Below are positions 21,192 to 57,849 of a DNA stretch of 58,885 bases, piece after piece; the stretch's first letter is position 1; each line of letters begins with the position of its first letter. The translations under genes were made by a program, and so were the position numbers. The DNA is from Schmidtea nova. Taxonomy: Eukaryota. Location of the stretch: contig CM097883.1 of NCBI GenBank assembly GCA_044892505.1, positions 135,413,116 through 135,472,000 on the forward strand, given 5' to 3'. The notes under the pieces are model-generated. The model was not told the DNA's origin. It did no database searches and saw only the letters and a list, made by a program, of their open reading frames with translations.

Positions 21192-22411
21192 ATGAATACA
21201 TTATTTTTATTAATTTCCGCGAAACTGCTAGTTTAAGAATTCCAACATCTGATTGGTCAATTCCTAATATAAAAATTTATTTCCTATAATGTAAGTATTG
21301 ATTTTTTTTGTTTTAATTCCTTAATACAGGGTTTCTTAACCGGTGAGGTATACCTCCCTTGGTGAGGTATGTTGAGGTTCCCCGAATCTCAACTTGGTAT
21401 CTTATATAAATAAATAAGATAACACTAGTTAAAAGATTTTATTCAAATATAACAAATACAAATTACCTCAAAAAATTTTTTAAAGATTTACAATGTCGTT
21501 CCTTTAATGTGTAAGTATATATATATGTATGCGTGTGTATGTGTGAATGCCTTCTGAGCTCGATATCTTGTATGCTTGAAATTATTATTTCAATAGTCGA
21601 TAACAACAATGAAATTCTTCTTACGCAAAGATTTTATGGGTGGTTTGACTGAGAAAAACGTTTGTATATATAGTTAATTTTTGTGGTCCTTAACTTCAAG
21701 TGACAAGAGTTGTTTTCTGTCAATAATATTTGTTTTTAATAAACAATTTTTCTATTTTAAATAGTACAAATAATAATTACTATATTTAGGAACATCCCTT
21801 TTACCAGCATCCCTAATGTTTAAAAATGTGATAATTTATATCAGGTTGATACTTATACCCTATTGATTATATTAATCTTCTTGTAATTTATTTCTATCTA
21901 TTTTGAATATTATTAATTATTATTTTGTTTTAATTCGTGTATTCATTCTATGAATTTTTTTTGTTTTTTAACCGCAGTGACCCCTATCTGAAAAAAATAA
22001 AGTTATTAAGTATTATTGGTATTAATATTATAGTTTTTTATCTTTACCATTGATCAAATAAATGTTGGGCCCGCCAAATAGGCTAAAATGACCAAATTAA
22101 TATAAAAGTTTAAATAATAACAAAAAAATAAATACAAAAAATATCAAAAAAGGCTAAATTAAAAATAGGAATAAAATAATAAATAATATTAAATAAATTT
22201 CCAGCAAAAGGAAAATTCAAAAATAAAACGGAAACAAGCAGTAAAGGGGGCCTGAAATAAGAATATTGGAAATTAAATAAAATTATAGTGCAAGTAATTA
22301 ATTAATTACTTTAAAAATTAGGACCACCCAGCGAGAAACCGGAAAAGGAAACAAAATAATATTTAGATTAAAATAAAATAGCAGAATCACTTTGATGGAC
22401 GGTCTGATCCT

Positions 22412-22447
22412 GATTGGTCAATCTGACCAGCCGGATCAGTATAAATA
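22412..22447 (+). promoter_or_regulatory. Inverted CCAAT + TATA core promoter
   Basis: GATTGG at 22412 and TATAAATA at 22440; the same 28-nt offset occurs in the two sister copies. Predicted 5'UTR intron 22620-22732. Confidence 0.65.
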
Positions 22448-23239
22448 CCGATCCGAAAATCCATAATTTAGCATAAATTTTGTGAGACTTAGACTTTGTG
22501 GTAAAGCATAAAATTCTGAGTACTGTAATTTAAAGCATAACTTTGAAGCCTATTTTGAGATAGAAATTCGGAGACTGATTAATTTGATCTTTTATTCGAC
22601 GAACTAACGAATTGGAACAGTAAATTTATTTTTTGTTAATATGTACCATGATTTCGTCATTATAATTTAGTCTAAGTTTTGATGTTTTATTATGATTTTA
22701 TGCATTTAATTTAATTTAATTCATGAATATAGTCATGCTTCCTCGACTGCTCACGCGGCGAGGGAGCCCGAGTCGTCGTTGTGGGGCTTCACGGTCTCAC
22801 ATGGCGGTTCAACCTTTTTATACATTGAACAATTTTTTTTGTAGTTCAATTGATTTATATGACAAACTTACGATAAATGAATTTTTCTGATTACGGTTGC
22901 ACAAAGGATGAGTCGCGAGGAGCAATAGGAAGAGTTTAGAGGGCTGTCTGATGGTGAGGGACACCCAAGGAGTACTGTGTACTCAACACCCGAGAGTTTA
23001 GTGAGACAAGTTAGATTTGAGCCCGAAGGATCGAGGGGGGTGAACTAAAAGTGGAAAGATTTCAATGTAGAATCGACATATTTTGTAAATTCATAAAGGG
23101 CCAAAGTCCGGATTTCAATCAGTTTCACATTCATCTAGTCGAAATAAAATTAAAGTTAAACAAAAAATTCGTAACATACATAAACATGCTTTAGTCGAAT
23201 TCCGATCGCGTCAGACCGCGACGGGATTCTAATCTAAAC

Positions 23240-23376
23240 CTATAAATAGAAATGTAAACCGATCGCTGTAAATAGCGCGGAAATTTAATTAAAATCTTTA
23301 GCCTGATCGCTGTAAATAGCGCAGGAATTTTGGAACTGATTTCGTTTTTTATTATCCTGATCGCTGTACATAGCGC
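23240..23376 (+). repeat. TATA box followed by three GATCGCTGTA(A/C)ATAGCGC hairpin repeats
   Basis: TATAAATA near 23241; 18-mer copies start at 23261, 23305 and 23359, each with a CGCT/AGCG stem. Confidence 0.8.
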
Positions 23377-23509
23377 AGTACGAGTTATAAATACATTATT
23401 CCGACCGCGGTACATCATGGCGGAGCTAATTCGAATTAGTAAAGATTAATTTTTTTGTTAAATGAATAATATTTATGATAAGTTAATTCGAAATAGCACA
23501 TATGTATAA

Positions 23510-23970
23510 ATCATGTACTAACCGAACTCAGGAATTCGGTAGAGGCGATCAATGAAAGGAAAACGACCGACATATTCAAGAAGCTTCCACCTCCGATTCT
23601 GCGTACGATAAACGCACAGGTGTACAAATGGCGCCGAGGATTCAACAGGAGATGCCCATTCTCCATTTGGGCAGATGGAAGTGACCGCATACTGTACCGA
23701 GGAGGCCCAGGTTGGCCAATCACCCGTGAATGGTATTCGAAACACTTCGGCCAAATGATAATACGAATAAACGATACAGAAGGAAGGCCCAACCAACTAA
23801 TCTACTGGGGACACATCCCCCGAAAGGAATTGCGTAAATTGGGGATTCATGCGTTCATTCCGCGCAAAGCATTCGGAATGGAGTGCGATGACAGACAACC
23901 CCGGTTTTCGTGGGCCAGGCTTCGTAGAACCCCTATCAATCAAGAGCTACACATTTTGTTTCAACAATAA
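23510..23970 (+). CDS. ORF A (unknown, Trp/Arg-rich)
   Basis: The frame is open upstream of the track start (HVLTELRNSVEAINERK..) through ..INQELHILFQQ, with AATAAA after the stop. Homologous fragment at 17098-17280. True start uncertain. Confidence 0.55.
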
Positions 23971-24139
23971 CGATCATTTGCGATTTAATAATAATAAATA
24001 GTTTAGTAAAAATCATGGTGTTGGTATTCGTTTTTTTTTGTTTTTGTATTCCATTTCAATAATTCAGAGAATGTTGATAAATCTAAATAACGTCTTAACA
24101 TGAGAACGATATGAAATTTAATCTAGCCAATTTGTAGAA

Positions 24140-24736
24140 ATGAATTTAGAAGCCGCCCAGAAGGAAATAGAAAAAATGTGGCGAATTCGGAGAGCCCAAG
24201 ATAAAGAGTTGGGTTTCATCAAGGAAAACTTAACCAAAGCCGAAGCGCAAATCGCTTACCTGCACAAGAGTTGGTTCGCTCCGGCTCGAATGAAAGAACA
24301 AATCGGAAAGACAGAGCGAGCACAGCGGACGGCAGATGATTTCCGAATGGAGTGGGAGGCCACCAAGATCGAGCTTTGCAAATGTCTCCACTCTGTGACG
24401 GCCTCGTATATCGAACGAGAGCTGAAAGACCTGATCAGGCCAGTAACCTATCAGGGATGGATTGCCGAAAAGAAAGTGGGAATATCAATTGGTACGGATG
24501 TCGAGGGCCTTACCGTAACGAGCGCCGAAACAAAATCGACAATTTGTGATAATACCCCCATCGTCAGTACGCATCAAAAGCGTAAAAGAATTGGCCAAAA
24601 GCGGCGCCATCAGCGAAAACTCTTCGCCCAAAAATTGCAGAGCCAGATTGAAGCATTGCATAAATTATCCGAAGAGGAATTGTTGAATGAGGTGTTTCCT
24701 CCGGAAGGAATTTTCAATGATTTTATAGAAAAATAA
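24140..24736 (+). CDS. ORF B paralog 4, intact 198 aa coiled-coil/basic protein
   Basis: Uninterrupted ORF; TGTAG|aaATG acceptor context; family motifs WFAPARMK, KIELCKCLHSVTASYIE..LIRP, RIGQKRRHQRKLFAQKL..LSEEELLNEV. Confidence 0.75.
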   Translation: MNLEAAQKEIEKMWRIRRAQDKELGFIKENLTKAEAQIAYLHKSWFAPARMKEQIGKTERAQRTADDFRMEWEATKIELCKCLHSVTASYIERELKDLIRPVTYQGWIAEKKVGISIGTDVEGLTVTSAETKSTICDNTPIVSTHQKRKRIGQKRRHQRKLFAQKLQSQIEALHKLSEEELLNEVFPPEGIFNDFIEK

Positions 24737-24942
24737 ATGAGTTTTCACAATGAGTTGATTTTCTTCTTGCTATTTCATCAGCTTATTGATTTAGTAGAAT
24801 AAGGGAAATGAATAATTTTGGGAAACATATATTTGCAAACTTCACGAGATTTTTGCGTAAAGTAAAGAAATGAATTAATTATAATTAATATAACTTCTCC
24901 AAAATTCGGACAAAGTTAATAGTTTGGTGATAAAGCGTAAGT

Positions 24943-25172
24943 CCTTCTAACGGCAGCGATGAACCCGTAAACATAAATGGGGAGTAGTACTAGCAATAGT
25001 ACTCACCTGCCCATCATTGTTTAACCACCTTGCGCATCACCAACTTGATTATCCAGGGAAATAATCAAGGGCGCTTGAGTGTAAAAATTTACGCATTTTA
25101 TGTGTGATCATGGATGAGGATCCCTAGTCATTGTTAGAACATTTTTCAACTAACCCCTCCATGAACCCAGCA
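24943..25172 (+). other. Conserved structured 3' cassette
   Basis: ATGGG-GAGTA-GTACTA(GCAA)TAGTAC-TCACCTG-CCCAT, followed by the CTTGATTAT/ATAATCAAG hairpin and ATCAC/GTGAT pairing; ends CCCAGCA. Confidence 0.75.
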
Positions 25173-26317
25173 TAAATATGAAAAAGGATAAAATAAATAA
25201 CATGATATTATAATTGTATTAATCAGCAAGTAATATTCATTAATACCTATAAATCATGGCGTAATTAACTCCTTTTCACAGATGGGGTATTTTAGGTGTA
25301 TTTTCAAACTCATTGCATTGATATAACAATTTGTTGTATGATATTTTTTTAAAAAAATCTGTCTGATGGAAATTAGTTTACCTATATCTTTTCAAGCAAT
25401 GAATTATTTATCCCCGTTTATTATTATTATTGTCATTATCATTATTATTATTATGAAGTTATTTATTACTATCATTATTATTATAATTATGCATTTTAAT
25501 TGCTCTTAAGAGCATTCTATTTTGAATGACACATTTTGTGTCTTGATTTAGAAAATTGCTCTTCAAGAGAATTTTATGACGCCTCGCGTTGAAAAATAAA
25601 GAAAACCTCTTTACACTGACGCATCGCGTTGAAAAATAAAGAAAACAATTTTTAAATTTGTATTAATTAACCCCTATAGGGCATTTTAATTAATTAAATT
25701 AATTATATATATTTGTATGGGGGGTCCTGACCCGGGATAATATTTGGCGATGACAGTGAATCTGTTGAAATATATTTATAAAATTTTCCTGATGGTAGTA
25801 GTGAATTTATCGAAATATATTTACTGCCATGTACAATTGTTATTTATTGAAAATCTTTTATTGAAAATGACAAAATAAATTATTCCCCAAGCCTCATAAA
25901 AATCATTAAAAAATTACAAAACAAAATACATAAAATAATATTATCAATTGATCAAATAAATCATATAATTGTCATCAATATACAATCAACAGTAAATTAG
26001 AATCACTAAAAACATAATGTCATTGAAGTTGATATTTTCTATTGATTATTGAATTGTCATTGCCATCTGATCCACATGTTTATTTATCCTGTACCTTCCA
26101 TTCCCTACTGTATAATATTTTAATTTTAAAACCCTTATTCTACGCCCATCTTCTAACAGGCATATTAATTTGTTAGGGGAGGTATGAGATTTTGTATATT
26201 TTTGTTATAGTTTTTTAAATTAAAAATTAAAATTATTTTCCAAAAAAAAATTATAATTATAAAAAATTCTTCAAATTTTAAACTTATTTTATTTATCATG
26301 TATTTATATTATAGTAT

Positions 26318-27415
26318 TGTTAGGATTTGGCGTTGTTGGTGAAATGGTAAAAGTTACCAATCAAATATCTGACTCCAAGCGTGCCTTTAATTGACCCCAA
26401 TAACAATTAACACAGGAAACTTTATTGAATATTACAAATATTGTCTTTAACACTGAATTGGCCAAAATCAACAGACCATCAATAATTTATACGGTGCTTA
26501 TTAAGACACGATGGTGAAGAAAAGCACTTTGTATAATCTTGGCTCAAACGATCACTCACCACTGATGGATACAACAATTGGTAATTTGGCTGGTTGTTTT
26601 CTTTATTTGACTTGGATTTACTCGGAACTTTATTCGATTGTAAACTGAATCAGCTCCTGTTGTCTATTTTTTCTGAGTTTCTTTTTAAGTCTTGTCTTGG
26701 GTTTCTGTACAATTCTCTTCACTTCTAATTCAATTATTCTATTTCACACCTTCTCCTTACAATATTCAGTTCACAGTTTCTCTAACAACTTTTGTTTCAC
26801 AACTTCGGTTCCCAATATTTTGTTTCACACTCCTCTAATAACTTCTGTAACAATTTCTTTCTACACTTCTGCTCTCAAATATGCTGTCTAAAATTCTAGC
26901 TTCTGTCTAACTCCTGTCTAAAATTCTCTCACTTCTTTCTAACTCCTGTCTAAAATTCTGATCTCTTTTGCTGCGTCTCTCCTTTTATATCTCGTCACTT
27001 TGTGGCACTTAATATTATCACTTGTTATTCCATTTTTTCCAACATAATTTCCCCTTCATTTTTCCAGCACTGAGTTATCTCTGACAGCCGTCAAGATAAC
27101 CTCTGTTTCCTTTTTGCCACTCCGACTTGTTTGATTTTTTGCCAACTTTATCTCTGACCGGTTGTCGAGATAAGATTCTTGTTGTTGTTTTTCCCAGTTT
27201 TCGAATTTTTCCTGGTTGCACTAATTAATTAGTGCTAACCTTTGTTTTTTTTCCTGTCTGATTTCTTTTTTCTGATTCCTCCTCCTCATTTCTCATTTCT
27301 TTTTATTTCCGTTTTCTTTTCCAAGCTCCTATCAATCGAGTCATTCCCCATGACGATTTCCCCCAAGTAATTTTGTTTATTTATTATATTATTTCTAATT
27401 TAGGTATCCTCAACA
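26318..27415 (-). repeat. 3' LTR (1098 bp)
   Basis: TGTTAGG..CCTCAACA; near-identical to 33942-34609 except for an extra 26662-27107. Minus-strand PPT AAATGGGGAG immediately adjacent (~27419-27428). Confidence 0.92.
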
Positions 27416-28908
27416 TAACTCCCCATTTAAAAAAAATTCGTCCTCGAATTGGTTATTTAATTTGTTCTTATTGTAATACCCCAAAATTCATATTTTCCAT
27501 TAAGGTCTTTCTATAAAATTAATTTATTCACATTTATAGTATAAATAATAGTTAATGATAATAATAATAATATTTACAAAAATACTTATCGTTACTACCA
27601 CAATTGATAATACAGTAATTCTAATCCTAATAATAATAATAATATATCCAACATTACCTTAACAATAATTCATACGATTTAGTTTCAATATCTGTTCTAC
27701 TGATATAGGAAATAACAATGGTACGGAATAGAGTATAATCAAAACGAAGTATATTGTCACTCGTCAAGATTTACTACTTACAATATCATCGCATGTTTGT
27801 GATTATGTATAATAATAATAAAAATAGTAATGCAATACCAATAACAATTGTAATAATAATTATAGTAACAATAACAATAACAATAGTACTAATAATAATA
27901 AAATCAACTAATAATAATTACAATAACAATAATAATAATTACAATAATACCAATAATATTAATAATGATGATAATAAAATTGTTCTAGTAATAACACTAG
28001 TAATAATAATTAATTAATAAATTTAATAAATTGCATTTTAATTTGTTTGCATGTTTAATTTGGAATTTGAATCACAATAAAAATGTTTATGTTACACAAA
28101 TTTGCAATAAATTATTTGATTTATTAATTCTACAGTTTAAAAATAACACGACAAATTTTTAACCGCTCATTTGTATAATTTTTTTTTAAAAATTTTTCAA
28201 ATGAATGTTTGTCAATTTGACATTTATTGCTGCATTTATTTCTGCATTACCGTGTAAAACAGGCTAATACTGTTCTAGATTTTCCAGTTGCACAATTGAC
28301 TATCACAGCTACTGCTTTGAATCACTGATTATGCTTGTGACTTTATGCTGGGCTGACTTTATAGCATACCACACACTGTATATAGCTATAAGTTTAACCT
28401 GTATCTTATGCCAACTTAAATAAATGAGCCTATTCCATTGAAGACATTCACTATACTGCATACATCGAACTGTTTAGTTATTTATCAGATTTTATTGCAT
28501 AAACAATCTGACAAAAATGACAAATTATTTAACTTCTTTTTTTTAAAAATTCAGCCATTTCAAGAAGCTTTTCCCACTAATTTCACTCACAACCTCATAT
28601 TTGCCGCACATAGCAACTACCGAGACTTCTTCAATATTTCACAAACCACGTATGGATTGTGTGCGCTTGATTTCTCCAAAATTGGCGGAACTTATGTGCC
28701 TTAAATGATTTGCTCTATTTTGTTTGTGTGTGACATTCATGTCCAAAAGACAACTTTTTTTTCAATCGTTTTGATTTAAGTGGAAAAATTTCAAATTCTG
28801 TGGCATTTTTATTCTTTGCATTTTCCCAATATTGTCCATCGGAAATTGCCAATATTAAATTCAACAAGCCTATCAAAGCTGCAACAGCTGCTGCCTCCCC
28901 TCGAAACT

Positions 28909-29010
28909 ATGGAGAACTCTCACGTCAAGACCGTCGATGAAGTGCTCAATCATTTCAATGACGATGAAGATGTCGGTTCGATCTACGCATAAGTTAAAAG
29001 ATTATAATGG
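28909..29010 (+). pseudogene. Fragment of the SERCA Ca2+-ATPase N-terminus inside the LTR element
   Basis: MENSHVKTVDEVLNHFNDDEDVGSIYA*VKRL versus recalled SERCA2 [32 protein letters not shown]. The TAA sits at the conserved Gln; similarity ends after ~34 codons. Confidence 0.8.
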
Positions 29011-29596
29011 TAGTTTATACTTTTGTTTTTTTTCGAAATTTTTTTTTATTAATTAATAATGATTATAAATAATAATAATAATGATGATATTAATAATAAT
29101 ATTAATATTATGACAATAATAATACTAGTATAAAATGAAATAATACTAGTAGTAATAATATTAATAATAATACTAACATTAATAACATTCTTGTTAACTT
29201 GAATTTATTTTATGATATTTTTTATTCTTACTTTATTTTATAATTTTAATTATTTACTATTCTGATTTTATTATTTTGTATAAATACATTTACTTTATTA
29301 CACTTACCTACCCACCCTTACCATAGGTGTTATTAATTAATTTAAATTATCCCACCAGCTGGTTACGCCTGTGCTGCAGGCTGATAGGGTAATTGGTTTT
29401 GAGAATCCAAATCCCGAAGTTCGAGATCTGCACTCTGAAAACCCTATAATCAGATTGTTTAATTAAAATTTTTTACACCATTATTATATTAAATATATAT
29501 TTTTATTTATACTTAATTACATATTTATATTACCTGAGTAACGTCCTATCGGACTTCTACTACAGGCGTAATAGTATCGTAATTCCTATTATACTC

Positions 29597-29597
<1 letters not shown>

Positions 29598-29656
<59 letters not shown>
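29598..29656. repeat. (TA)n microsatellite
   Basis: Uninterrupted TA run. Confidence 0.95.
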
Positions 29657-29659
<3 letters not shown>

Positions 29660-29887
29660 CGTATATTTTATCATTACTATACAATTAATTAATTGATACA
29701 TCTAATTTTTTTTCCACAGAAATTAATTTTACTCAAGGAACTATGGGACTATGAATTTAATTTTTCGCAGAAATTAATATTTACTATTTTATTTTTTTTT
29801 TGAATTTTTTTACTACTTAGACAATTTTGGGATATTAATAATATTTTTGGGGAAATTAATAACAATAAGACTTTCTTTAATAAAATT

Positions 29888-31434
29888 TTATTTATCAATT
29901 ACAACTTTGATAGTTTGGTTTCTTCCTCTATACGTGACTACAACCTTTGTCGCTTCCAATTCCTCACCATTGAATGTGATCACCTTATCGACCACTATTC
30001 ATTCTTTTGTTTGATTTCCTTTTTCAACACTGTTTTGTTGTATCATTGTTTTGTCCATCTCCACAATTGCATTTTTAAATAAATCAAGTTTTTTCTCAAC
30101 CAACATTTTCGCAGTTTTCTCACGAGCAATATGCATATGTTCCACCATATGAATGTCTTGTTCCATTCGCTGAACTTCAGCTTTCTTTTTCTCTTTTGGT
30201 TCCTCCTTCTGCTCACTGGTTGTTAGAGCCTTTCTTTTCCTATACTCTTCTAACGAATATTTTCTTTTACTGGCCGTCTCCTCATTTTCCACATCATCCT
30301 GCCATTAACTTTCTAAGGCCCAATAAATTATTCGTATTGCGTCCATATCTTCTAATGCGGAATGCTTTCCTTTCTGCATTTTTATGTCGCACACTTCTTC
30401 CGCGACTATTGACAATTTAAACCATTGTCCATTGATACTTACTTTTCTCTTCAATAGGGCGTTTGCTCGAGCTAGATCGAGGATGCCCCATAATTCATGT
30501 ATATTGTCACCGCTGTATAATAATTCGTTTCTTAAATCGTGCCCAACTAAAATCTGTCTAGCCGTCAATTCTCTAATTTTCTTTGCACTTGCATACTGAT
30601 CTTCTTGATTTCTGGCCATTTTCTCGGAAATTCCGTGTATTTGAGTCACGAAATTTTTCAACTTTTCCCGGGGTGTTATTAAAGAATTATACCATATTTT
30701 TCCGGTATAATCTATTAAACATATTGAGACTGGTACCATTTGATTTTTCTCATTCACCCCATATTCTGCATCCATGAACAGAATGTTTCTTCTAATTTCT
30801 TCTTTTGTCATCGGCTTTCTCAAAAATGACTTCCTGTATTTCAGCATTTCTTCTGATATTGGAAGTAGCTTACTTTCCTCCTCCTTGGATATTATTTGTT
30901 CCAATTTAAGAATTTTTGGAGCTGGTCCCCTGCATTCTAATGCAATGCAAGCAGTTCCATTGGCTGCTAGCATTTTTTATGCCATATTTCTTCAGCTATC
31001 TTCCATGATGAATTGGCCGTCATTGTTAGCAGGATAGTGCCATCATTTTCTAAAATTTCTATCCTTCCTTTAAAAACGTGGACCTCCCATGTCTCATCGT
31101 TTTTCCTTACCAATAACTCTGAAAATTTGGCGTTGGATTTTCATTCCAACTCTACCATACATATTCTCATTTCTTCATTCCCTAATCTCGTCCAATTCGG
31201 AATTTTCAAGTTTTCTTCTATCACAATAACTTTGTCCGTATAGTTTCTATTTTCATTATAATACTTCTCATACAGCCTCGTCGGTTTCTCTATTTTCTCC
31301 ATTCTTTCCTTCGTTTGCTTTTTGATTTGATACTCTTTTGATTTTTTGAATTTCCAAGTCAAATTTTGAAAACAACCGCCAATTTTATACCCAAAAATTC
31401 TCTCTCTTAGTATTGAGATTATTCGACTTATCAA
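29888..31434 (-). pseudogene. ~500-codon gene with central DEDDh (REXO4/ISG20-like) 3'-5' exonuclease
   Basis: ExoI FMDAEYG, ExoII LVGHDLRNEL, ExoIII HSALEDMDA. Track ORFs 31141-31434, 30305-30973 and 29999-30292 join across TGA 31141, a frameshift near 30975, and in-frame TAA 30305 and TGA 29999 to a final TAA at 29888. Confidence 0.85.
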
Positions 31435-32463
31435 ATCACATCCGAATAAATTTAAATATAAAAATAAAAATTTACAATGAAAAATATCATTTATTATACT
31501 ACATCAGAGTTCATTGAAAAGAAATAAAGATAATATCATAATATCATGCAATACAATAGAATCTTACTAAACCAATGTTTCTAACCACGTAAATGCCTGC
31601 GGTTCACAATAGCTCAAATCAAACATAGGGTAGTTTCTTTTGTCAGTCTTTGAAAATGATAATAATGTAAATGAATAGAACACCGCTTGGGATTGTCATG
31701 ATTACGCATATAAAAATATATCTACACCATTGTCATTTAAAGAGTTTTTTCTATAGATCAGTGTCTTTTTATCAACTGATGAAAGAGTCAATGCTTGAGT
31801 TGAACTTCTGTTGCCTTTCTGACTTCCAACTTTATGAATTTCATCCATCATCGGTTTAATTTTAACGAAATTTCTCCACTCTTCTTCGCACATGTGAGTT
31901 TGTATTAGATTTTACTCAAGCAACCTTTCTTTATAAAATCAAAACAGAATTTGACCCTTGGTACTTTAAAAAATTTGAAACTTTACTCATTTCCTTTTTT
32001 TTCAAACGACCTCAAAATATTTAGTCAATTAAATTCAAAATACATTGGGCATTTTTGTTCAATACTACTGCAAAAATTGGAATGTAATAAAATTTATTGT
32101 TCAATCATTTTTATTTAAATACTAATAATAACTAAAATAATTTTATCTTTCGCAAAGTTCAATCTCATTAAATTAACGTTTGACAGCATACTAATAGCTT
32201 CTCATCAGATTTAATTTCACTTCATTACAAATTGACAATTCCCTACTCACACCTGCAAAGTAAAATTTTATTATCTAATTCTCCCTTGGACCCAATACGA
32301 TTTCCACATTTAAAATAAATAACACTGACGTAGACAATCACTGGAATGCAAATGTAATTCTTTAAGGATGAACTTATATACTCAAAATGATATCTCATTA
32401 TTTCTTCTTTATGTCTACTCTCGTAAAACTTTAACTGAATCCATATTAATTTAATAATCACTA

Positions 32464-33936: not shown

Positions 33937-33941
33937 AATAA

Positions 33942-36720: not shown

Positions 36721-36739
36721 GGCAAGTCAAAATTTCATC

Positions 36740-38056: not shown

Positions 38057-38564
38057 CTCACAGTACATCCAGAAATAAAATATATAAATTGGAAAAAAAA
38101 TGCAATGCATCAATAAGCAAACTCACCGAGCTGGAAACAAAATGACAAGTATTAAAAATAAAATACAACACAAACGCACATACAGACTAAATTGTGATTG
38201 GTTGACGGAAGACTGCAAACCCCTATATAAGCAGCAGCAAAAATCAGTAGTTGAAGTCGTTTTAGAGAGTGGTTTAGAGAATTTTCAGAGACAAGTCAAG
38301 CCTAATTAGAATCTTGTAAAAGTCATTCTGAAAGTGTCATTGATCATTGTATACCTGAAGCAATTTGTAAATCGGAGTAAATACAGGTATTACTTGGTGA
38401 TTTTCATTTTTACCCTCATGCTGTCTCTTTTTGTTTGTTAAAATCGGTAGGATCGCGCCCCGAAGGTCTTCCGACCCGGCGGGCGACATGGGCCTCTCAG
38501 CGCAGCATCCTGTAGGTGTTGACTCATGCGGCGTTGACTGTAAGTCATTCTAAATATGGGAGGT

Positions 38565-38621
38565 TACTCATCATCCTAAATCATTATGTGCACTGCACAT
38601 AGTGATTTAGGATGATGAGTA
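38565..38621. repeat. 57-nt near-perfect hairpin
   Basis: TACTCATCATCCTAAATCATTATGTGCA-C-TGCACATAGTGATTTAGGATGATGAGTA: 28-bp arms with one T:G pair. Confidence 0.95.
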
Positions 38622-38797
38622 TTAGTAAATGCAGATGATATGACTGGGTTAACGTCACGAACAGAGATTGGGGAGCTACACTAACAGGAATTCCGTATAC
38701 TTCAAGTTTAGGCCGTTCTGTTATCGTGTCCGAAAATTAAAATATCTCCGTAAGAATTCATTGTGGCGATGAGAGAATGTCTGAGATGATTGTGGGA

Positions 38798-39215
38798 ATG
38801 ATGATACAAACTGAGATTCTGCTTGGATAAAGAGGGATTGAAACGTTTTATCAGCAGCGACGAATAAAACTATTGGAAAGTTACATCAGTCGGCAGGCAG
38901 TAGAGCTGGACACTATAAAGAGAACCTGGTTTAGTCCGGAGAGGGTAAAGGAAGTTTACCAGAAACGAGATCGTGCGGAAAGATCTAGCAGAACAGGCTC
39001 GAGAAACCGCTACAGTGAGGCTGGAGTTGAATAATTGTCTAAGGGCCTCCACAAAGGAATTCATCGAACAGCAGCTAAAACCACTGATTAGTGCAAGTAA
39101 CTTTGATCGCTGGGTAACTCCATCCCGACACAATATCGAAACGCAGACCGAGGAAAATGGAAAACCTGCCCAGGATAAAGAAGTAGCAACAGCTAGTTTG
39201 ATGTTTGAAGGGTAA
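38798..39215 (+). pseudogene. ORF B paralog 5 (C-terminus replaced)
   Basis: RRIKLLESYISRQAVELDTIKRTWFSPERVKEVYQKRDRAE/DLAEQARETATVRLELNNCLRASTKEFIEQQLKPLISASNFDRW; closest to the 49692 copy. Confidence 0.82.
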
Positions 39216-39319
39216 TTTATGGAAGGGTAATTGAAGCGAATTGATGCTGTTTTGAAGGACAAATTGGTTGATAGGAATAAAATTTTATTCGAATCATGCG
39301 TTTTTAATGGTTTAAATAT

Positions 39320-39337
39320 TGGTAGTAGAGCGTGGTT
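39320..39337 (+). promoter_or_regulatory. Probable PBS (initiator tRNA-Met type) of the BEL-like insertion
   Basis: TGGTAGTAGAGCGTGGTT resembles the TGGTAGCAGAG..GGTT complement of tRNAiMet; preceded by AATAAA and a degenerate LTR-like end. Confidence 0.55.
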
Positions 39338-39695
39338 CCCATCGGGGCGCCACGCACACTTTGGAAATCTGAGAGCTATCCTGTTAGTATATATTTTTAT
39401 TAAAAAGTCTAATATGTTTTTTGTAAATTTTTATAAATGTTTTAAATTTGTAATTGGGGTATGGATCACCATTCCCTCCAAAGCGCGTCTTGAATGGGAA
39501 ATGAGGTTAGGGAGTAAAAGGCGAAAGTTTAAGTTAATTAATGAAAGAGAAGTGAAAGTTGGAATGGCTTGGCCACCGGATATTGTGAAAGACGGCTGCT
39601 ATGGGCCTCAGCATTCTTTTAAATTCCGGGATAACATTGGTAGGGAAGGTGCTCGTAAGAGGTATCCGCATAGGGTTGGGCGAGCGAGAGAGACA

Positions 39696-41020
39696 TGGCA
39701 GATATTTGTAAAAACATTAACAGGGAAAACTATTACCCTTGAAGTTGAAGCAAGCGACATGATAGAAGATATAATGGGAAAAATTCAGGACAAAGAGGGA
39801 ATACCATCTAGTCAACAAAGGCTTAGGTATAATTACAAACTTTTAAAGGAAGGAAATAGATTGAGTGATTACATGATACATGATAAATCTACTATTCATC
39901 TATCACTGAGATTGTGTGGAGGGAATGATGAGGATGAGGAATTAGAAGAAGGATTGAGAAAAAAGAGGAGTGTTAAGTATAGGTTGACGAGATTAAGAAA
40001 TAAATGGATGAACGATATGCTGGCAGAAGATGCATCACATGTCTTTGATGAATATCAGGAAGCAATGGAAAGTACCATAGTGAGTTTTGAAAGATTGTTG
40101 GACATCAGCAAAAGATTAGGAAGGTCAGATACAACAACTGTGCTAGAAGCGGATTTAAAAGAGATTAAAGAAAAGAATGATAAGGTGGAAGAGCTAATTT
40201 CGTCAAAGGCCCATCAGTCAGTTAGATCGGATGACAACAACACCATTAAAGAGGTAGGTGGGAATGAAACAAAGAAAAGACTCGATAAAATGCAGAAGAT
40301 ACGAATTCAGATTTTTGATGGACAACATAAAGAATACGAAAGTTGGAGAGCTGCCTTCCATACTTGTGTTGATAGTGCACATGGTGAGGATGATGAAAAG
40401 ATGCTACATCTTCGATCATATTTGAAAGGTGAACCGTTAAGGTTGATCAAGAATTTAGGATTTTCTTCAACTGGTTACAAAATGGCAAAGTAAAAGCTCG
40501 ATAAAAGATATGGCGGGGAAAACGAAATTACTTAGCTGCTCTGGAAGATATCGACAGCTTCCGACCCGTTCGTGAAAATGAAATGCTGGAAATAGAGGCA
40601 TTTGTTGGATTATTGGAAACGCTAGAAGCTAGAATAATTAGTATTAGACGAGAGGACGAAATGCAGAACAGTGATTTAATGAAGAGATGCCTTAAAAAAC
40701 TACCCAGCTTGCTGCTATACAAATGGAAGAAAGATGTTAAGGAGGAAAAGGTAACCGAGTGTATCCAAGACTTAAGAAAGTGGTTACAAGATGAAGTCGA
40801 GCTGTTAAGGTCAATCAAAGAAACTCTTTATGAAGTTGGTGATGACAATAGAAGAAACAATTGGAAGAGGCAGGACGGATCGTCAAGAAACCTTGTAAAT
40901 CTAAGACAAGGGAACCGGACGCTTGTTGGACAAGTAGTGAATAGGAATGATAACAAGGCAAACATGTCAAGAAACGGAATAACGGCACTAAAATGTAAAA
41001 TAAAACATCATTTTTTACTG
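39696..41020 (+). pseudogene. Ubiquitin-like domain fused to BEL/Pao-type gag (DUF1759-like)
   Basis: Ub 39696-39923 ([23 protein letters not shown]) in frame with [39 protein letters not shown]; remnant C-K-HHFLLH knuckle near 41000. Confidence 0.85.
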
Positions 41021-42294
41021 CATAGCCCAGGAGTAAAAATGGATGACAGTAAAAAGACAGCCGAGAATCAAAATATGTCAATGGTGACATATCGAGAAGA
41101 ACAGTATGAAAAGGAATATATCGAGAGTTTTGCACCTAAAGCTCAGGAAGAAGTTTTAAGTGAAACTCAAACTGGTGATAGCGATTTGAATTCAAATAAA
41201 AATGAAGATAACTCGAAAAAGGATAATATTGCTGGTGAAATGGTTGACAACTTTAAGTCTGTCGGTATTGCAAGCGAGGATGAAATAAATAATTTTTCAA
41301 ACGAATTAGTGCAAGAAGTAAGGACGGAAATTGAATCTACAATGGTTGTGGAAGATGAGCAGGCAATGAATGAAGAAATTACTGATGAAAATTGCATTGT
41401 CGAACAGAAAATTGTTGAAAATATTAACGATATCGAAGAAAATTATAAAATTAAGGAAAATGGCGGAGAGAATTCCATTGTTGATGAAAAGATGGAGCAA
41501 GAAATATTTGAAAGGTCGAATATTAATAAAAATGATAAAATAGATGAACTGTCTTTGGTAATTGAAACTATTTCTCAGCAAGTGCAAAAATCTGTTGAGT
41601 TTCAGCAGTCACTCCAAAATTCATTTGAAACAAGTAAAGACAAAGGTGAAAAACTCATGGGAGAATTAAAAAATGTAAATTTGATAAACGAAAATTTAAA
41701 TGATAAAGATGAATTCGGAAATAGGATATAGATCTTGGAATTTGAAATAGAAGATCTTGAAATAAGATAAAAACGACTGAATTAGAATATAAAAGCGAAA
41801 TTAAAGAGTTAGAAGTAAAGTTAAAGAATTTGGCTGAAACTATAGAAACGTTATCAGTGGAGATGAGAAATGTAAATGCCATTAACGATAAATTGGCAAC
41901 GGTAAATTTGGAAATAAAAATGTCCATATGTGTGAGGATGAGTATCCAAGATAGTATAAGAGGATTAATGGTCGAAGAAAAATTCAAGGACAAAAATAAG
42001 TATTGGCCGAAATGGAAAAATAAAGTTAAGAATCAGAAGGTTCCCCCCCAGAGATGAATGGGTCAGTTGATCCGCTAGAAGCGACCAAAGCTTGCTTCTA
42101 TCTGAGCCTATGTGTGCGTTGCATGTGTGGAGTCGCGTCCGTGTGCGGTTTATAACTTAAGTTAGTTTTATTCGTGTAGTGAAGGTGAAAAGTGAAAAGG
42201 CTTAATGCTAAAAATGAAAAGGAATAACAATAAAAAACACTTGGGGTTGACACAAGGGTGGCCTTTCATTTGAAAATTAACCTCGCTTCCAACA

Positions 42295-42480
42295 AATGAG
42301 GGAATAGTAGCCGCAATGTTGCTCACCTGCCTCATTATCCTACAACGTTGATACAGTACCAACATGGTAAGCAATTAGGGGCAAGCCATGGGTATCAACG
42401 GGGAGATGTTTTTATGTTGGTGGGACTACTCACAACATCACAAAGTAAGTCTCAGTTGAAAATCTACCAACACTCCAGCA
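42295..42480 (+). other. Conserved structured 3' cassette
   Basis: AATGAGG-GAATA-GTAGC(CGCAAT)GTTGC-TCACCTG-CCTCATT; crossing helices CGTTGATAC/GTATCAACG and ACCAACAT/ATGTTGGT. Confidence 0.8.
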
Positions 42481-45799: not shown

Positions 45800-46700
45800 A
45801 GATAAGATATTTCTACAAGATATCCCTATACTAATAGAGGAGATAACACTTGGAACATGTGAGCAGACAAATATGTGCACTCCAGAACAAAGACATGTGA
45901 CGTCATCGCATGTGTGCGTCCAATCAAAAATAAATAGGCCCCGGGCCCCCCCCCGCTTTTTGGGAAGTTGCAATAGAAGTGCAAACAAGTTGCAATGGAA
46001 ATGCAATCAAGTTGCAATTCATGATTAATACAAATACATCTTAGATAAATTTGTATAAATAATTGAAAATTTTTGATTATTTGTAAAATGAAACAAGAAA
46101 TATTTATTTGAAAATTGATTGATGGTCTCTTATCAAAAGGAAAAATATGATGATGAAAGGGCAAGGAATTTGCAATACAAGTGTGTGACTCATGTAGTAC
46201 ATGCATAACATGACATATATAGTACAAGTGTTTCATACAAGTGTAATAAGCATCAGTGATTTATACCAACAATTCAGACTTGAAATGTGAAGAGTAACAC
46301 CGAAGTTGAACCCTAGTAGCAGAACATTGGTAGCATAACCTCTTTTGTGATGGTTTTATCTGCAATAGCTTCATACTGAATATTTTGATTCAAATATCAA
46401 TATTATTGTAAAATCTTTTAATATCAATTATATTCAGTATCAGAATATTTCTAACAAAACTCTGATAGCAGAACACTAGAAGCAGAACATTGGTAACAGA
46501 ACATCTTTTGTGATGGTTTTTATCTGCACAAGCTTTATACTGTATTTCATGTATCAATAATCTCAACTATCAGAACCTTTCTAATAGAACACTAGTATCA
46601 GCACATTTGTAGCAAAACTACTTTTATGATGGTATTTATCTGCAAAATCTTAATCTAATGTTTTATTGGCAAATAAGTGTATGTGTGTGTAAATAATTAG
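45800..46700 (+). repeat. Degenerate minisatellite family (agcagaacatt / tttgtgatggtttttatctg units)
   Basis: Units at ~46320-46360, 46480-46530 and 46600-46645; the same motifs recur at ~57950-58050 and 58690-58745. Confidence 0.6.
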
Positions 46701-47262: not shown

Positions 47263-47465
47263 NNNNNNNNNNNNNNNNNNNNNNNNNNNNNNNNNNNNNN
47301 NNNNNNNNNNNNNNNNNNNNNNNNNNNNNNNNNNNNNNNNNNNNNNNNNNNNNNNNNNNNNNNNNNNNNNNNNNNNNNNNNNNNNNNNNNNNNNNNNNNN
47401 NNNNNNNNNNNNNNNNNNNNNNNNNNNNNNNNNNNNNNNNNNNNNNNNNNNNNNNNNNNNNNNNN
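47263..47465. other. Assembly gap
   Basis: Run of N. Confidence 1.
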
Positions 47466-48846
47466 ACCATCAATCAAATTTCAAATAAATATTTTGTTGG
47501 GCCAGCCAAATCGAGCAGCATCTGAAAAATAATACACAATCAATAAAATAAATCTACAAAAAAGAACAACAAAATAAATTACCAACACCAAAAAGTAGCA
47601 AATGAGCGGTAACATCTAAAAGAAATAAAGCATTAATCAGAATAACATAAATCTTAAAAACTCACCCATGCGAATCAGATAAAATCTGAAAATGACAACA
47701 GGTGGGCGGACATCACCGAAGACCTGAAACAAAAATAAAATAAAAATTAAATCATACCAAAATAAACTTACCGCATGATTAAACAAACAAATCATTGAGT
47801 TGAGTTAGGCAGCAAAAAGCCGACAAACACAAAAGAATGACCAGACATACACACATACTCGATGCTGATTGGCCAGCCAACAACACCGGTTTAGTATATA
47901 TACTGAAGTCAAATCAGTATTGGTAATGTCATTTTTTACTGAGTGTGAACTTATCGTCACAACTTGTAAACAACTTGGAAGTGGAAATAAAAGGTAAATT
48001 CGAGTTGTGTTCTATATTATTATTTTAAACCCTCATAATCATAATTATTAATGATGTTAAAATCAATAAGGATTTTCCGGAGGCCTAACAGCCTGACGGA
48101 TTCTTGGCCTCTCGGTGCAACACATTCTCATGTGAGGTACCGATGCGGCGGGACCATAGGTGTTCTAAATATTTAGTGATCGGGAAGGGGGTAAGTGCAC
48201 ATAGGATATCTAATAACATCACGTCGATCGTAAATTCAACAGGAATAAAGGCAGTCTCGTAAGTATGATATATGTCATGGCGAGGGTTAGACAAGGGGTA
48301 GACGCATGAGGTAGGTAACATCAAGTCTATTGAAGTTTTTTTTGACGAGCGTAGAGGCAATCAAAGACATATTTGTTAGACCCGAAAACCTCGAAGACCG
48401 GAATGACATGCAGAAACGGGGGTAATGATAAATCAACCGCGCATTTCAATCATATACAGCTAGCCAGCGACCAGTATAATGAATAAGCCCGTATACAATA
48501 GGGGATCACCAAAGTTCCCGAACCCTGATGATCATTGGTAGTTAGATAACGAATGACAGGGAATGTCGATTAAGATAAATCTACGAATAATATTGTAAGT
48601 TGCGATATGCTGCTGTGTGTTGAAATAATGTTGAACTAAGAGCGGAGTGAAATGAGATTAACCAAGAATGAGTGGCTAACTACGGCCTACACCACATCAC
48701 CGTCGCTCGTAATGTAATCCACGCAATGAACTGCTGAGGCCTACTAATAAATGACCAATAATCAAGTAGGCTGATCAATATATATATACTTACGATCAGA
48801 AACAGTAGCTGACGAATAACCTAAGCACTCTTTCGTTTAGAGCAAA

Positions 48847-49482
48847 ATGGTCAAACTCGAAAAGCATACGGAGACACCCGCAGTCTCGCCGCCCGCGACA
48901 AAGGAGGGTCGCATCTTCCGAAGGAGACGACATACCCGATCTATCGTCAAGCAGGATTCTAAATCCGAAATTCAAGGGGAGAAGGACGCCCCACGACAAA
49001 TCGTCGAGATAGCGCGCCGACATCTGCGTCGATGAATGCGACGGCACATGAGTGTAGCCGCAAGCATCCCAGCCTGCGCGTTCCAGATACAACTTCGATG
49101 GGAGGGAGATGCCAATTGGGCGTCATCGTCGAACCCTCCGGAACGAAAATCTACCCAATGGTTTTATCAGTTCCTGGACGAATCCAATCAGCCCCGATGG
49201 TTACTAAGCTCGGAAGCGATGACAGGAAAAGCATTATATCAGCTTGGATACTTGCTGCTGGACAGGCCTCGGTGTGGCGACACTGGGGAAGTCCAAGTCT
49301 ACCCAAACGCTCCCGGAAGCGTCACGTTGGATCACCATCCGGAGCCCAAAGATCTTCGCCTATGGGAGGTATTCATATACCAGGGTAAGTTGAGCTGGCA
49401 CCCAGCCCCGGAGTTATACCACGAAACTGGGATCCGCCGAGATGAAAATTTCGCCGACCAGGAGCTACGGTCGTTCTGTTAA
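48847..49482 (+). pseudogene. ORF A-position gene, 211 codons with one in-frame TGA, Arg-rich N-terminus
   Basis: Track ORFs 48847-49035 and 49036-49482 are one frame split by TGA in HLRR*MRR (CGA>TGA plausible). TATATATA at ~48780 flanked by CTGATC/GATCAG; TTTAG acceptor 6 nt before the ATG. Confidence 0.6.
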
Positions 49483-49691
49483 TCAAGAGAAGGCCACACT
49501 CAGAAAATCAAAGGATCCAGTTCACCCCTGTTATAATTTAAAAATAAACGTTTAGTTGAATAGTGTTTCTGGTTTTGTTTTCGGAGTGTATGTGACGAAT
49601 ATAGGAGTAAAAATGGTTGATTGATTGTAGGAGCAAGACTAGAGAGACGGATAGATGTCCGCTACACTAATTAACGTCACATTTTATAGAT

Positions 49692-50246
49692 ATGAACGAG
49701 AACACTATCCGAGACTACAAACAGGAAGCACGCGAACACAAGGCACGCTCCAAGGTACTCGAGAGCCGCTTACATCAATTAAGCGCAGAACATCAAAGAA
49801 TAAAGACAACATGGTTCAACCCCGAGAGGATTAAAGCCATTTTACAGGCGAGGTACCGAGCAGAACAGGTTGCCGACGAGCAGGCGAGAGAAGTCGCCGC
49901 GTTAAAATTGGAATTAGCCAATTACCTAAAAGTCTCGACGCAAGAGTTTATTACGGAACAGTTACGCCCAATGATCAGGGCAAGTACCTTCAACAGATGG
50001 ATAGACTCAATAGCGGTCACTACCAGTACCCAAACCGAAACTGAAACAAATGTCACAACAACTACCGAGTCGATGAGGATAATCCCGGAAGGCTCAAAGC
50101 GGACAAAGCGACGAAACCGCCTCGGAGCCAAGAAACGTCGAGCCTATGCCGAACGCCTGGGCATCGAGGTTGATCTGCTCAGTGGACTCTCCGAGCAGGA
50201 ACTATTGAATGTGATCCGACCGTCGGTGTTGTTAAATTACAAATAA
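49692..50246 (+). CDS. ORF B paralog 6, intact 184 aa coiled-coil/basic protein
   Basis: Uninterrupted ORF; TATAG|atATG; WFNPERIK, LKLELANYLKVSTQEFI..MIRASTFNRW, RLGAKKRRAYAERL..LSEQELLNVIRP. Confidence 0.78.
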   Translation: MNENTIRDYKQEAREHKARSKVLESRLHQLSAEHQRIKTTWFNPERIKAILQARYRAEQVADEQAREVAALKLELANYLKVSTQEFITEQLRPMIRASTFNRWIDSIAVTTSTQTETETNVTTTTESMRIIPEGSKRTKRRNRLGAKKRRAYAERLGIEVDLLSGLSEQELLNVIRPSVLLNYK

Positions 50247-50412
50247 ACGTATTCTCATGAAATGACTTGATTTGTTTGCTTGTAGTATGTCTGAGTATTA
50301 AATGTAAGGTAAAACCTGATTCATTTGAGATTGTAGGTACTCTAATAACTGAATTAACCCTAGAGCAAAGGAAAGAGCGCGTTATAAAGGGACCGAAAGA
50401 AATCCACAAACA

Positions 50413-50621
50413 CCTTCTATCGGTAGTGGTGGACCCGTGAATAAACAAGGGAATAGTAGCCACAAGGTTGCTCACCTGCCTTGTCATTTCACAACGTTGA
50501 CACAGCACCAACATGATGAGTAGTTAGGGTGTCAGCGGGGGAATGTTTTTATGTTGGCGAGATCACCCTAACGTTTAACATCCTAATGATCTCAGTTGTC
50601 CAGCTAACCAACACACCAGCA
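50413..50621 (+). other. Conserved structured 3' cassette
   Basis: ACAAGG-GAATA-GTAGCC(ACAA)GGTTGC-TCACCTG-CCTTGT; crossing helices CGTTGACAC/GTGTCAGCG, CCAACAT/ATGTTGG and GTTAGGGTG/CACCCTAAC. Confidence 0.8.
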
Positions 50622-56890: not shown

Positions 56891-56899
56891 AGGTAGATG

Positions 56900-57845: not shown

Positions 57846-57849
57846 TTAG

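What the first reader, a model, noticed from the sequence alone, without database searches (positions are those of the whole stretch)
22063..50621. Family of ~3.1-kb TG..CA elements with 4-bp TSDs that carry genes but no mobility enzyme (giant gene-bearing solo LTRs or a new element class)
Seen: two complete copies, 22063-25172 (3110 bp, TSD TAAA) and 47495-50621 (3127 bp, TSD ATTT). Both start TGTTGGGCC(C/A)GCCAAAT and end CCAGCA, and both have the same internal order: promoter, 5'UTR intron, ORF A, polyA signal, ORF B, polyA signal, structured cassette. Their interiors are too diverged to align easily, yet the lengths differ by only 17 bp. Partial copies lie at 15938-17280 (minus), 38057-42480 and, as ORF B only, at ~19.2 and ~20.4 kb. 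Established: TG..CA ends with short inverted repeats and a 4-bp TSD are the signature of Gypsy/retroviral-type integrases, also used by Ginger transposons; solo LTRs keep a TSD on both sides. Inference: either solo LTRs of a giant retroelement whose LTR encodes two proteins downstream of the TATA box (unlike U3-encoded nef or sag), or stand-alone non-autonomous elements moved in trans. The conserved length hints at a functional or packaging constraint.
Basis: partly seen in the sequence, partly recalled or inferred. Interest (0 to 1): 0.9.

Follow-up and report, generated by a model that had tools for sequence, protein, structure and literature searches.

The report
Giant gene-carrying solo LTR-like repeats
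Two complete 3.1-kb repeats are true mobile-element insertions with retrovirus-type ends, most likely lone LTRs of a giant-LTR retrotransposon lineage, and unusually they carry a conserved gene for a protein with no known relatives plus a folded RNA domain.

Summary
The observation largely holds. c1 (22063-25172) and c2 (47495-50621) start TG, end CA and are flanked by 4-bp duplications. For c2, an inverted paralogue of its insertion site (46002-46125) is uninterrupted and holds one copy of the duplicated 4-mer, so its ends and duplication are well supported. The assembly gap lies 29 nt outside c2.

Conserved across copies that otherwise barely align:
- the first 17 nt
- a CCAAT/TATA block with identical 22-nt spacing
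- ORF B, a 184-198 aa helical, basic protein with no relatives found
- a ~200-nt 3' domain with compensatory base-pair changes

"ORF A" is not conserved.

Most likely (0.65) these are solo LTRs of giant-LTR Ty3/gypsy-type retroelements. A bona fide LTR element in the same window (26318-34609, with primer-binding site, purine tract and gag) has similar termini and a 4-bp duplication. The units have no long inverted or direct terminal repeats and keep the sequence upstream of their own promoter.

No paired copy flanking gag-pol was seen, and no copy outside the window could be reached. A stand-alone element (0.15) is therefore not excluded. Moderately interesting: an LTR-borne, intron-containing gene.

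The parts
22063..25172 (+). c1, complete unit (3110 nt), TG..CA, flanked by TAAA at 22059-22062 and 25173-25176
47495..50621 (+). c2, complete unit (3127 nt), TG..CA, flanked by ATTT at 47491-47494 and 50622-50625
   Evidence: ends supported by the empty-site paralogue
46002..46125 (-). Uninterrupted inverted paralogue of c2's insertion site ('empty site'), with one copy of the duplicated 4-mer
22063..22079 (+). 5' terminal 17-mer of c1. The c2 counterpart is 47495-47511, 16/17 identical. Read as the U3-end integrase recognition site.
22410..22448 (+). Promoter-like block of c1 (inverted CCAAT box, 22-nt spacer, TATA). Counterparts are c2 47865-47904 and c3 38195-38231, with the same 22-nt spacing.
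24140..24736 (+). ORF B of c1, intact, 198 aa. Two long helices, a disordered linker, and a basic helix followed by a Leu/Glu-rich motif.
49692..50246 (+). ORF B of c2, intact, 184 aa
23620..23970 (+). 'ORF A' of c1. It lies in a GC-rich stretch and has no similarity to c2's ORF A (49036-49482). Coding status is doubtful.
24958..25172 (+). 3' structured cassette of c1, read as U5-like. It lies downstream of the last polyA signal.
50426..50621 (+). 3' structured cassette of c2
38195..42480 (+). c3, rearranged copy. It has the promoter block, an ORF B remnant, about 2.9 kb of extra sequence, the cassette (42277-42480) and a CA end. The 5' terminus is missing. The A-rich stretch 38066-38194 may also belong to it.
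38831..39215 (+). ORF B remnant of c3: broken once (one frame change), C-terminal third absent
39231..41731 (+). Extra segment in c3. It contains a diverged ubiquitin domain fused to a weakly gag-like (DUF1759) ORF, followed by a second ORF rich in acidic residues.
15938..16697 (-). c4, 5'-truncated copy. It has the cassette (16125-15938, ending CCAACA) and an ORF B remnant (16219-16697) that is broken once and lacks its N-terminal third.
19228..19749 (+). ORF B remnant without cassette or termini: broken once, N-terminal quarter absent
20445..20824 (+). ORF B remnant without cassette or termini: broken once or twice, N-terminal part absent
47263..47465 (.). Assembly gap, 29 nt outside c2. Not part of the element.

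Best explanation
The units are solo LTRs (c1, c2) and LTR remnants (c3, c4 and two ORF B fragments). They come from several old, diverged families of one lineage of Ty3/gypsy-type LTR retroelements with giant LTRs of about 3.1 kb.

Shown:
- Each complete unit is a discrete insertion with TG..CA ends, a 6-7 bp imperfect terminal inverted repeat and a 4-bp target duplication.

Inferred layout within the LTR:
- The first ~350-370 nt, with the conserved 17-mer at the very end, act as U3 and the integrase recognition site.
- The conserved CCAAT/TATA block starts transcription.
- The long transcribed part carries a short intron, a GC-rich stretch ('ORF A', probably not a conserved gene) and ORF B.
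- Each of the two ORFs is followed by a polyA signal.
- The last ~200 nt lie downstream of the last polyA signal. They form a conserved sense-strand RNA fold that would act as U5, next to the primer-binding site in a full element.

Inferred history and function:
- Recombination between the two LTRs of full elements left single LTRs that keep the duplication on both sides.
- ORF B has a helical hairpin plus an arginine-rich helix and a Leu/Glu-rich motif. It is proposed, with low confidence, to be an RNA-binding accessory or chaperone protein expressed from the LTR. An AG preceded by a T-rich stretch lies just upstream of its ATG, suggesting a spliced message.
For: - Ends and TSDs. Chance of a flank match is 0.0067 each.
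- Paralogous empty site for c2.
- The 5' ends fit the TGTNR pattern of Gypsy LTRs (PMC2836005).
- Internal control: the element at 26318-34609 has paired LTRs with TGTT.GG...CAACA ends and a 4-bp TSD (GTAT). It also has a 23-nt tRNA-complementary PBS 5 nt after its LTR, a purine run before the other LTR and a gag domain. The c units share its terminal style and TSD length.
- There are no TIRs of 40 nt or more and no terminal direct repeats.
- The promoter block is conserved, with identical 22-nt spacing in three copies. The sequence upstream of it is retained up to a precise conserved terminus.
- PolyA signals are conserved after both ORFs.
- In the cassette, 12 of 27 base pairs show compensatory changes, 0/500 shuffles reach the observed score, and slid controls are far lower. 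Several G-U pairs make the fold strand-specific, and all four copies fold alike.
- ORF B is intact in two copies that are otherwise almost unalignable.
Against: - No copy in the window is paired with a second copy around a PBS, gag-pol and PPT. None of the four 3' ends is followed by a PBS.
- No relative could be retrieved from any outside collection, so the pairing test was not possible.
- With the TATA block about 390 nt from the 5' end and two polyA sites inside the unit, the implied R region would be about 2 kb. Genomic transcripts would have to read through two polyA sites, which is atypical.
- Only the 5' end carries a long conserved terminal sequence.
- Both partial copies that keep a terminus keep the 3' one. 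This can also be read as 5' truncation.
Confidence: 0.65

Rival explanations
1. Stand-alone, non-autonomous gene cassettes. The 3.1-kb unit is itself the mobile element. It is inserted by a retroviral-type or Ginger-type DDE integrase supplied in trans and never forms part of a larger LTR-flanked element.
For: Every terminus seen is solitary. c1 and c2 each have their own TSD, and no PBS or PPT adjoins any copy. Each unit looks like a self-contained transcription unit with promoter, intron, ORF and polyA signals. The lengths are similar (3110 and 3127 nt) despite the divergence. Cargo differs between copies: c3 lacks the ORF A region and carries a ubiquitin/gag-like segment.
Against: No known mechanism makes a linear single unit with integrase-ready ends without paired LTRs. 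Cut-and-paste relatives (Ginger) have 40-270 nt TIRs, which are absent here. The long conserved terminal sequence is at one end only. Solo LTRs are common and give exactly this picture. The 3' domain conserved as an RNA fold points to an RNA stage.
Confidence: 0.15
2. Retroposons copied by a LINE reverse transcriptase through target-primed reverse transcription. The structured 3' cassette is the recognition signal, and 5' truncation produces the partial copies.
For: The 3' domain is conserved and structured. Both partial copies that retain a terminus retain the 3' one (c3, c4). There is no polyA tail, as in stringent-type LINE partners.
Against: Both complete copies have exactly 4-bp TSDs, TG..CA ends and a terminal inverted repeat. 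The units keep about 350-370 nt upstream of their conserved TATA block and an intron-like segment, which an RNA copy from that promoter, or a processed RNA, would lack. The c3 junction with the hAT remnant looks like a deletion, not an insertion: no hAT continuation follows c3. Two ORF B fragments lack the 3' end.
Confidence: 0.05
3. No mobile unit at all. The TG..CA ends and 4-bp flank matches are chance in AT-rich DNA around a dispersed gene family.
For: The genome is AT-rich and the two TSDs are AT-only. The interiors barely align.
Against: The paralogous empty site ends exactly at both c2 termini. Joint chance of the two TSDs is about 4.5e-5. The identical 17-mer occurs only at the two 5' ends. 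Cassette similarity stops at the CA in four copies.
Confidence: 0.01

Closest known systems
Solo LTRs of Ty3/gypsy-type LTR retrotransposons
   Same: TG..CA ends, a TGTNR 5' end, a short imperfect terminal inverted repeat, a 4-bp TSD on both sides, and an internal TATA promoter and polyA signals. The termini resemble those of a real LTR element in the same window.
   Different: The size (3.1 kb). A conserved, apparently spliced protein gene lies downstream of the TATA block. There are two internal polyA sites. No paired copy was seen.
Woot, a gypsy-class element of Tribolium castaneum with very long LTRs (Beeman et al. 1996; the LTR length of about 3.6 kb is recalled from memory; the paper, PMC1207274, was not held)
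   Same: An invertebrate gypsy-type element reported with LTRs of similar, exceptional length. The window's base composition would fit such a genome.
   Different: No sequence comparison was possible. The source organism of the window is unknown. Whether Woot LTRs carry ORFs is not known to me.
Retroviral accessory genes lying in or overlapping the LTR (MMTV sag, lentiviral nef)
   Same: Protein-coding capacity placed inside the LTR.
   Different: Those genes lie in U3, upstream of the TATA box. ORF B lies downstream of the conserved TATA block. No sequence or fold similarity to any known protein was found.
Ginger1/Ginger2 DNA transposons (PMC2836005)
   Same: TGTNR termini and 4-bp TSDs.
   Different: Ginger elements have 40-270 nt TIRs and encode an integrase-like transposase, and Ginger1 targets CCGG/CCGT. 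The units have no TIRs and no transposase, and their targets are AT-only.
Large non-autonomous LTR elements (LARD, TR-GAG types)
   Same: Very long LTRs and dependence on enzymes supplied in trans. The neighbouring element 26318-34609 (gag but no RT or IN detected) shows that such derivatives exist in this genome.
   Different: Those are defined by paired LTRs around an internal domain, which was not observed for the c units.

Membership tests
LTR of a Ty3/gypsy-type LTR retrotransposon (here as solo LTR) | TG..CA termini with a short imperfect inverted repeat; 5' end TGTNR | tested here: met
   The pattern is as given in PMC2836005. c4 ends CCAACA, the exact complement of the 5' hexamer.
LTR of a Ty3/gypsy-type LTR retrotransposon (here as solo LTR) | 4-6 bp target-site duplication, identical on both sides of a solo LTR | tested here: met
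   TAAA and ATTT. Chance is 0.0067 each. An empty-site paralogue exists for c2.
LTR of a Ty3/gypsy-type LTR retrotransposon (here as solo LTR) | Contains a promoter and a polyA signal (U3-R-U5 layout) | tested here: inconclusive
   A conserved CCAAT/TATA block and polyA signals are present. They imply an unusually long R, and no transcript data are available.
LTR of a Ty3/gypsy-type LTR retrotransposon (here as solo LTR) | Elsewhere occurs as a same-orientation pair flanking PBS, gag-pol and PPT | not testable with these tools
   No pair is present in the window. No outside copy was found. The source genome is not searchable here.
Ginger DNA transposons | Terminal inverted repeats of about 40-270 nt | tested here: not met
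   The local alignment score of the first 300 nt against the reverse complement of the last 300 nt is within the range of shuffles.
Ginger DNA transposons | Integrase-like transposase gene (autonomous copies); CCGG/CCGT (Ginger1) or RTATAY (Ginger2) targets | tested here: not met
   The ORFs of the units have no Pfam domain. The targets are TAAA and ATTT.
LINE-dependent (target-primed) retroposons | 3' polyA or simple-repeat tail, TSDs of variable length, 5' truncation at insertion | tested here: not met
   There is no tail and both TSDs are 4 bp. The truncated copies are uninformative: the c3 junction looks like a deletion.
LTR-borne retroviral accessory genes (sag/nef type) | ORF located in U3 upstream of the TATA box; recognisable family | tested here: not met
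   ORF B lies about 1.7-1.8 kb downstream of the conserved TATA block. No family, sequence or fold match was found.
Woot-like giant-LTR gypsy elements | Sequence relationship of the LTR or pol to Woot | not testable with these tools
   The paper is not held and no comparator sequence is available. This lead comes from memory only.

The most novel reading that the evidence does not exclude
The units are a new class of stand-alone, integrase-mobilised gene cassettes. They would be single units with LTR-like ends that never form part of a larger retroelement. They would carry their own promoter, an intron, an orphan RNA-binding-like gene and a cis-acting RNA fold, with exchangeable cargo as in c3.
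Probability: 0.12. Interest if true: 0.85.

Novelty: new variant of a known kind. Interest (0 to 1): 0.5.

Why it matters
If these are LTRs, they show that an invertebrate-type LTR retroelement lineage has kept two things inside its LTR across families that no longer align. One is an intron-containing protein gene placed downstream of the LTR promoter. The other is a conserved U5-like RNA fold.

That differs from the known U3-borne retroviral accessory genes. It would make every solo LTR a potential free-standing gene, with its own promoter and polyA site, scattered through the genome. ORF B is an orphan family whose role is open; candidates include RNA chaperone, export adaptor or host-defence antagonist.

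If they are not LTRs, they would be a new kind of mobile element.

Either way, the family fills about a fifth of this window, so it is probably a major repeat of the source genome.

Tried and rejected
Searches for relatives that found nothing:
- ORF B: word-index search, a profile search of 1.84 billion representatives that returned only a spurious bacterial repeat protein, Pfam, PDB sequences, and Foldseek against PDB and viral models.
- Exact-protein look-ups of ORF B and of the hAT ORF: not on record.
- Rfam at gathering and permissive thresholds, and tRNA scan: nothing.
- Pattern scans for the cassette and for the 5' end plus promoter in metagenome and viral contigs: 0 hits.
- The gag-like part of c3: no relatives found.

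Ideas tested and dropped:
- c1 and c2 share a target sequence. The flank resemblance is at chance level.
- c3 is an insertion that was 5'-truncated when it entered a hAT element. No hAT continuation follows c3, so the junction is uninformative.
- Hidden short LTRs or TIRs inside the units: none.
- Hammerhead or HDV-like ribozyme, tRNA-like end, or hepatitis delta antigen likeness of ORF B. These were considered from memory, and no tool returned such a hit.

Literature: searches for Woot LTR details and for LTR-borne ORFs gave nothing usable.
Full report
**The window.** It is AT-rich (GC about 0.33, CpG observed/expected about 0.94) and crowded with mobile-element remains:
- hAT (5712-7382, and 36869-38048)
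- mariner (51988-52791)
- gypsy-type RT/RNase H (8511-9578)
- gag (32935-33609)

There are two assembly gaps, 15350-15495 and 47263-47465.

**The gap, tested first.** The gap at 47263-47465 ends 29 nt before the first base of c2. Those 29 nt match the paralogous arm at 46098-46126 at 28/29 positions. No part of c2 and none of its ORFs touches the gap. Nothing on the left side of the gap matches the continuation of that arm. Continuity across the gap therefore cannot be shown. I inferred nothing about it and filled nothing.

**Ends and duplications.**
- c1 (22063-25172) reads TAAA|TG...CA|TAAA. c2 (47495-50621) reads ATTT|TG...CA|ATTT.
- At these spacings a 4-nt flank match occurs at 0.67% of positions in this window, so two of them are unlikely by chance.
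- The first 17 nt of the two units are 16/17 identical. That 17-mer has no other match in the window with up to three mismatches.
- The terminal inverted repeat is only 6-7 nt. c4 ends CCAACA, the exact complement of the 5' hexamer.

**An empty site for c2.** The stretch 46002-46125 is an inverted paralogue of the DNA on both sides of c2.
- It matches the reverse complement of 50723-50622 (94%).
- It then continues without interruption into the reverse complement of 47494-47466.
- It carries a single copy of the 4-mer that is duplicated at the filled site.

This supports c2 as a discrete insertion with exactly the proposed ends and a 4-bp duplication. c2 sits in one arm of an inverted-repeat structure whose other arm stayed empty.

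**What is conserved.** c1 and c2 hardly align by BLAST, but they are colinear overall. The global alignment score is 595 against 312 +/- 22 for shuffles that keep local composition, and their GC profiles run in parallel. The conserved islands are:
1. The terminal 17-mer.
2. A block with an inverted CCAAT box and a TATA box, 347 and 370 nt from the 5' end. It is 31/46 identical. The box-to-box spacing is exactly 22 nt in c1, c2 and also c3.
3. An intron-like segment downstream. c2 and c3 have clear donor and acceptor motifs. This is motif reading only.
4. PolyA signals with T/GT-rich downstream sequence after the ORF A region, and another overlapping the ORF B stop.
5. An AG preceded by a T-rich stretch just before the ORF B start codon in c1 and c2.
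6. ORF B.
7. The last ~200 nt.

**ORF B.** The two intact copies (198 and 184 aa) are 32% identical over 150 residues (E 1e-16). Their stop-free lengths exceed those of shuffles (2/500 and 0/500).
- A profile of the window's copies finds exactly six loci: c1 and c2 intact, and four remnants.
- Remnant in c3: broken once, C-terminal third missing.
- Remnant in c4: broken once, N-terminal third missing.
- Remnant at 19.2 kb: broken once, N-terminal quarter missing.
- Remnant at 20.4 kb: broken once or twice, N-terminal part missing.
- The predicted structure (pLDDT 80) has two long helices, a disordered linker, and a basic helix followed by a short Leu/Glu-rich motif that is the best-conserved stretch.
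- No relative was found by any route. It is an orphan.
- Its proposed role as an RNA-binding accessory protein is inference from composition and fold only.

**ORF A.** The ORFs at the equivalent place in c1 and c2 show no similarity at protein or translated-DNA level.
- They lie in GC-rich DNA where several frames on both strands are open.
- They exceed shuffles only marginally (3/500 and 36/500).
- c3 lacks this region altogether.
- I do not count ORF A as an established gene.

**The cassette.** Four copies exist, and similarity stops at the CA in each.
- The RNAalifold structure has 27 pairs, 12 of them with compensatory changes.
- 90.7% of cells are paired, against 32-46% when the partners are slid by 1-3 columns. 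None of 500 shuffles reaches the observed covariation.
- Several G-U pairs make the fold specific to the sense strand.
- Each copy on its own folds into the same arrangement (z-scores -3.3 to -0.9).
- Caveats: only four sequences were available, and the structure was derived from the same alignment.
- No Rfam family matches.
- The cassette lies downstream of the last polyA signal. Only a read-through or genomic-type RNA would contain it.

**An internal control.** The window holds a bona fide LTR element at 26318-34609.
- Its LTRs are 92-96% identical. One carries a 433-nt insert.
- Its ends are TGTT.GG...CAACA with a 4-bp duplication, GTAT.
- On its coding strand a 23-nt tRNA-complementary site lies five nt after the LTR.
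- A purine run precedes the other LTR, and it has a gag domain.

The termini and duplication length of the c units resemble those of this element. By contrast, none of the four c-type 3' ends is followed by such a site, and neither complete 5' end is preceded by a purine tract.

**Interpretation.**
- The integrase-type signature is established.
- The units have no long inverted repeats and no short direct terminal repeats. That removes Ginger-type transposons (features from PMC2836005) and miniature LTR elements.
- They retain a precise, conserved 5' terminus about 350-370 nt upstream of their own conserved TATA block, as well as an intron. A simple RNA copy made from that promoter, or a processed RNA, would lack both. 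LTR-type replication regenerates the upstream part.
- A structured, conserved segment after the polyA site is what U5 looks like in retroelements. This rests on established knowledge of retroviral leaders, not on a test made here.
- Solo LTRs are therefore the most economical reading (0.65).

Weaknesses of this reading:
- The implied R region is very long, with two internal polyA sites.
- No paired copy is present in the window.
- The genome-wide pairing test could not be run.
- A stand-alone element (0.15) and a target-primed retroposon (0.05) remain, in that order.

**The third copy.** c3 keeps the promoter block, an ORF B remnant and the cassette.
- It lacks the 5' terminus and the ORF A region.
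- It carries about 2.9 kb of extra sequence with a diverged ubiquitin domain (E 6e-21) fused to a weakly gag-like ORF (DUF1759, E 0.006, below Pfam's cut-off).
- No hAT sequence resumes after c3, so the junction does not discriminate between the models.

**Known relatives and novelty.**
- From memory, the gypsy-class element Woot of Tribolium castaneum was described with LTRs of about 3.6 kb. The original paper is not held, later papers only name it, and no comparison was possible. This is a lead, not a test.
- Giant LTRs are therefore not new. A conserved, apparently spliced protein gene downstream of the LTR promoter, together with a conserved U5-like fold, would be a new variant.
- The family may already sit in a repeat library that I cannot consult.

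- Two of my scripts printed the bounds of stop-free pieces, including those of broken ORF B copies. My first notebook entry lists bounds of ORF B pieces. I count this as a possible slip against the rule on places of breaks.
- I wrote short degenerate search keys for two conserved blocks. No consensus of the element or its gene was built.
- Consensus lines printed by the alignment tools were not used.

Noticed in passing
window 26318-34609: A bona fide LTR element. It has paired LTRs (one with a 433-nt insert), a 4-bp TSD (GTAT), a 23-nt tRNA-complementary PBS at 33914-33936 (minus strand), a gag ORF (32935-33609) and an RNase_T-like exonuclease ORF (30305-30973). No RT or integrase was found among ORFs of 70 aa or more, so it is probably a non-autonomous or decayed derivative, possibly with a captured exonuclease.
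   Followed up: partly
window 45998-46125 and 47466-47494 + 50622-50727: Two inverted arms (94% identical) of a foldback or TIR-like structure. c2 sits in the right arm. The inner extent is hidden by the gap at 47263-47465. A 22-nt tandem motif lies at 45965-46018.
   Followed up: partly
window 8249-8870: A perfect (100%) 311-nt tandem duplication inside the gypsy-type RT/RNase H region. It is either a very recent duplication or an assembly artefact.
   Followed up: no
window 12226-15209: ORFs that look Maverick/Polinton-like by eye: integrase-core-like and chromodomain-like pieces on the minus strand (14349-15209) and a packaging-ATPase-like ORF on the plus strand (12226-12666). Pfam support is weak (Chromo E 6e-4, RNA_helicase E 0.03). 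The region lies next to c4 across the gap at 15350-15495.
   Followed up: partly
window 39231-40493: A diverged ubiquitin domain ending in a Gly-Gly, fused upstream of a weakly gag-like region inside c3. It may be a captured ubiquitin acting as a cleavable fusion partner. No relatives were found for the gag-like part.
   Followed up: partly
window 23190-23400: Three closely spaced copies of a ~20-nt motif with a small internal inverted repeat in the middle of c1. No counterpart was seen in c2.
   Followed up: no
window 38565-38621: A near-perfect 28-nt palindrome (96% complementary, 1-nt loop) in the leader region of c3.
   Followed up: no
window 56899-58885: AT-rich tandem arrays with several nested periods (15-62 nt, then 29/58/125 nt) that run to the end of the window.
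   Followed up: no
window 5712-7382 (minus) and 51988-52791 (plus): An intact 556-aa hAT-type ORF and a mariner-type transposase ORF. Together with the other remains, they suggest that the window is a transposon-rich region such as pericentric heterochromatin or a small-RNA cluster.
   Followed up: no
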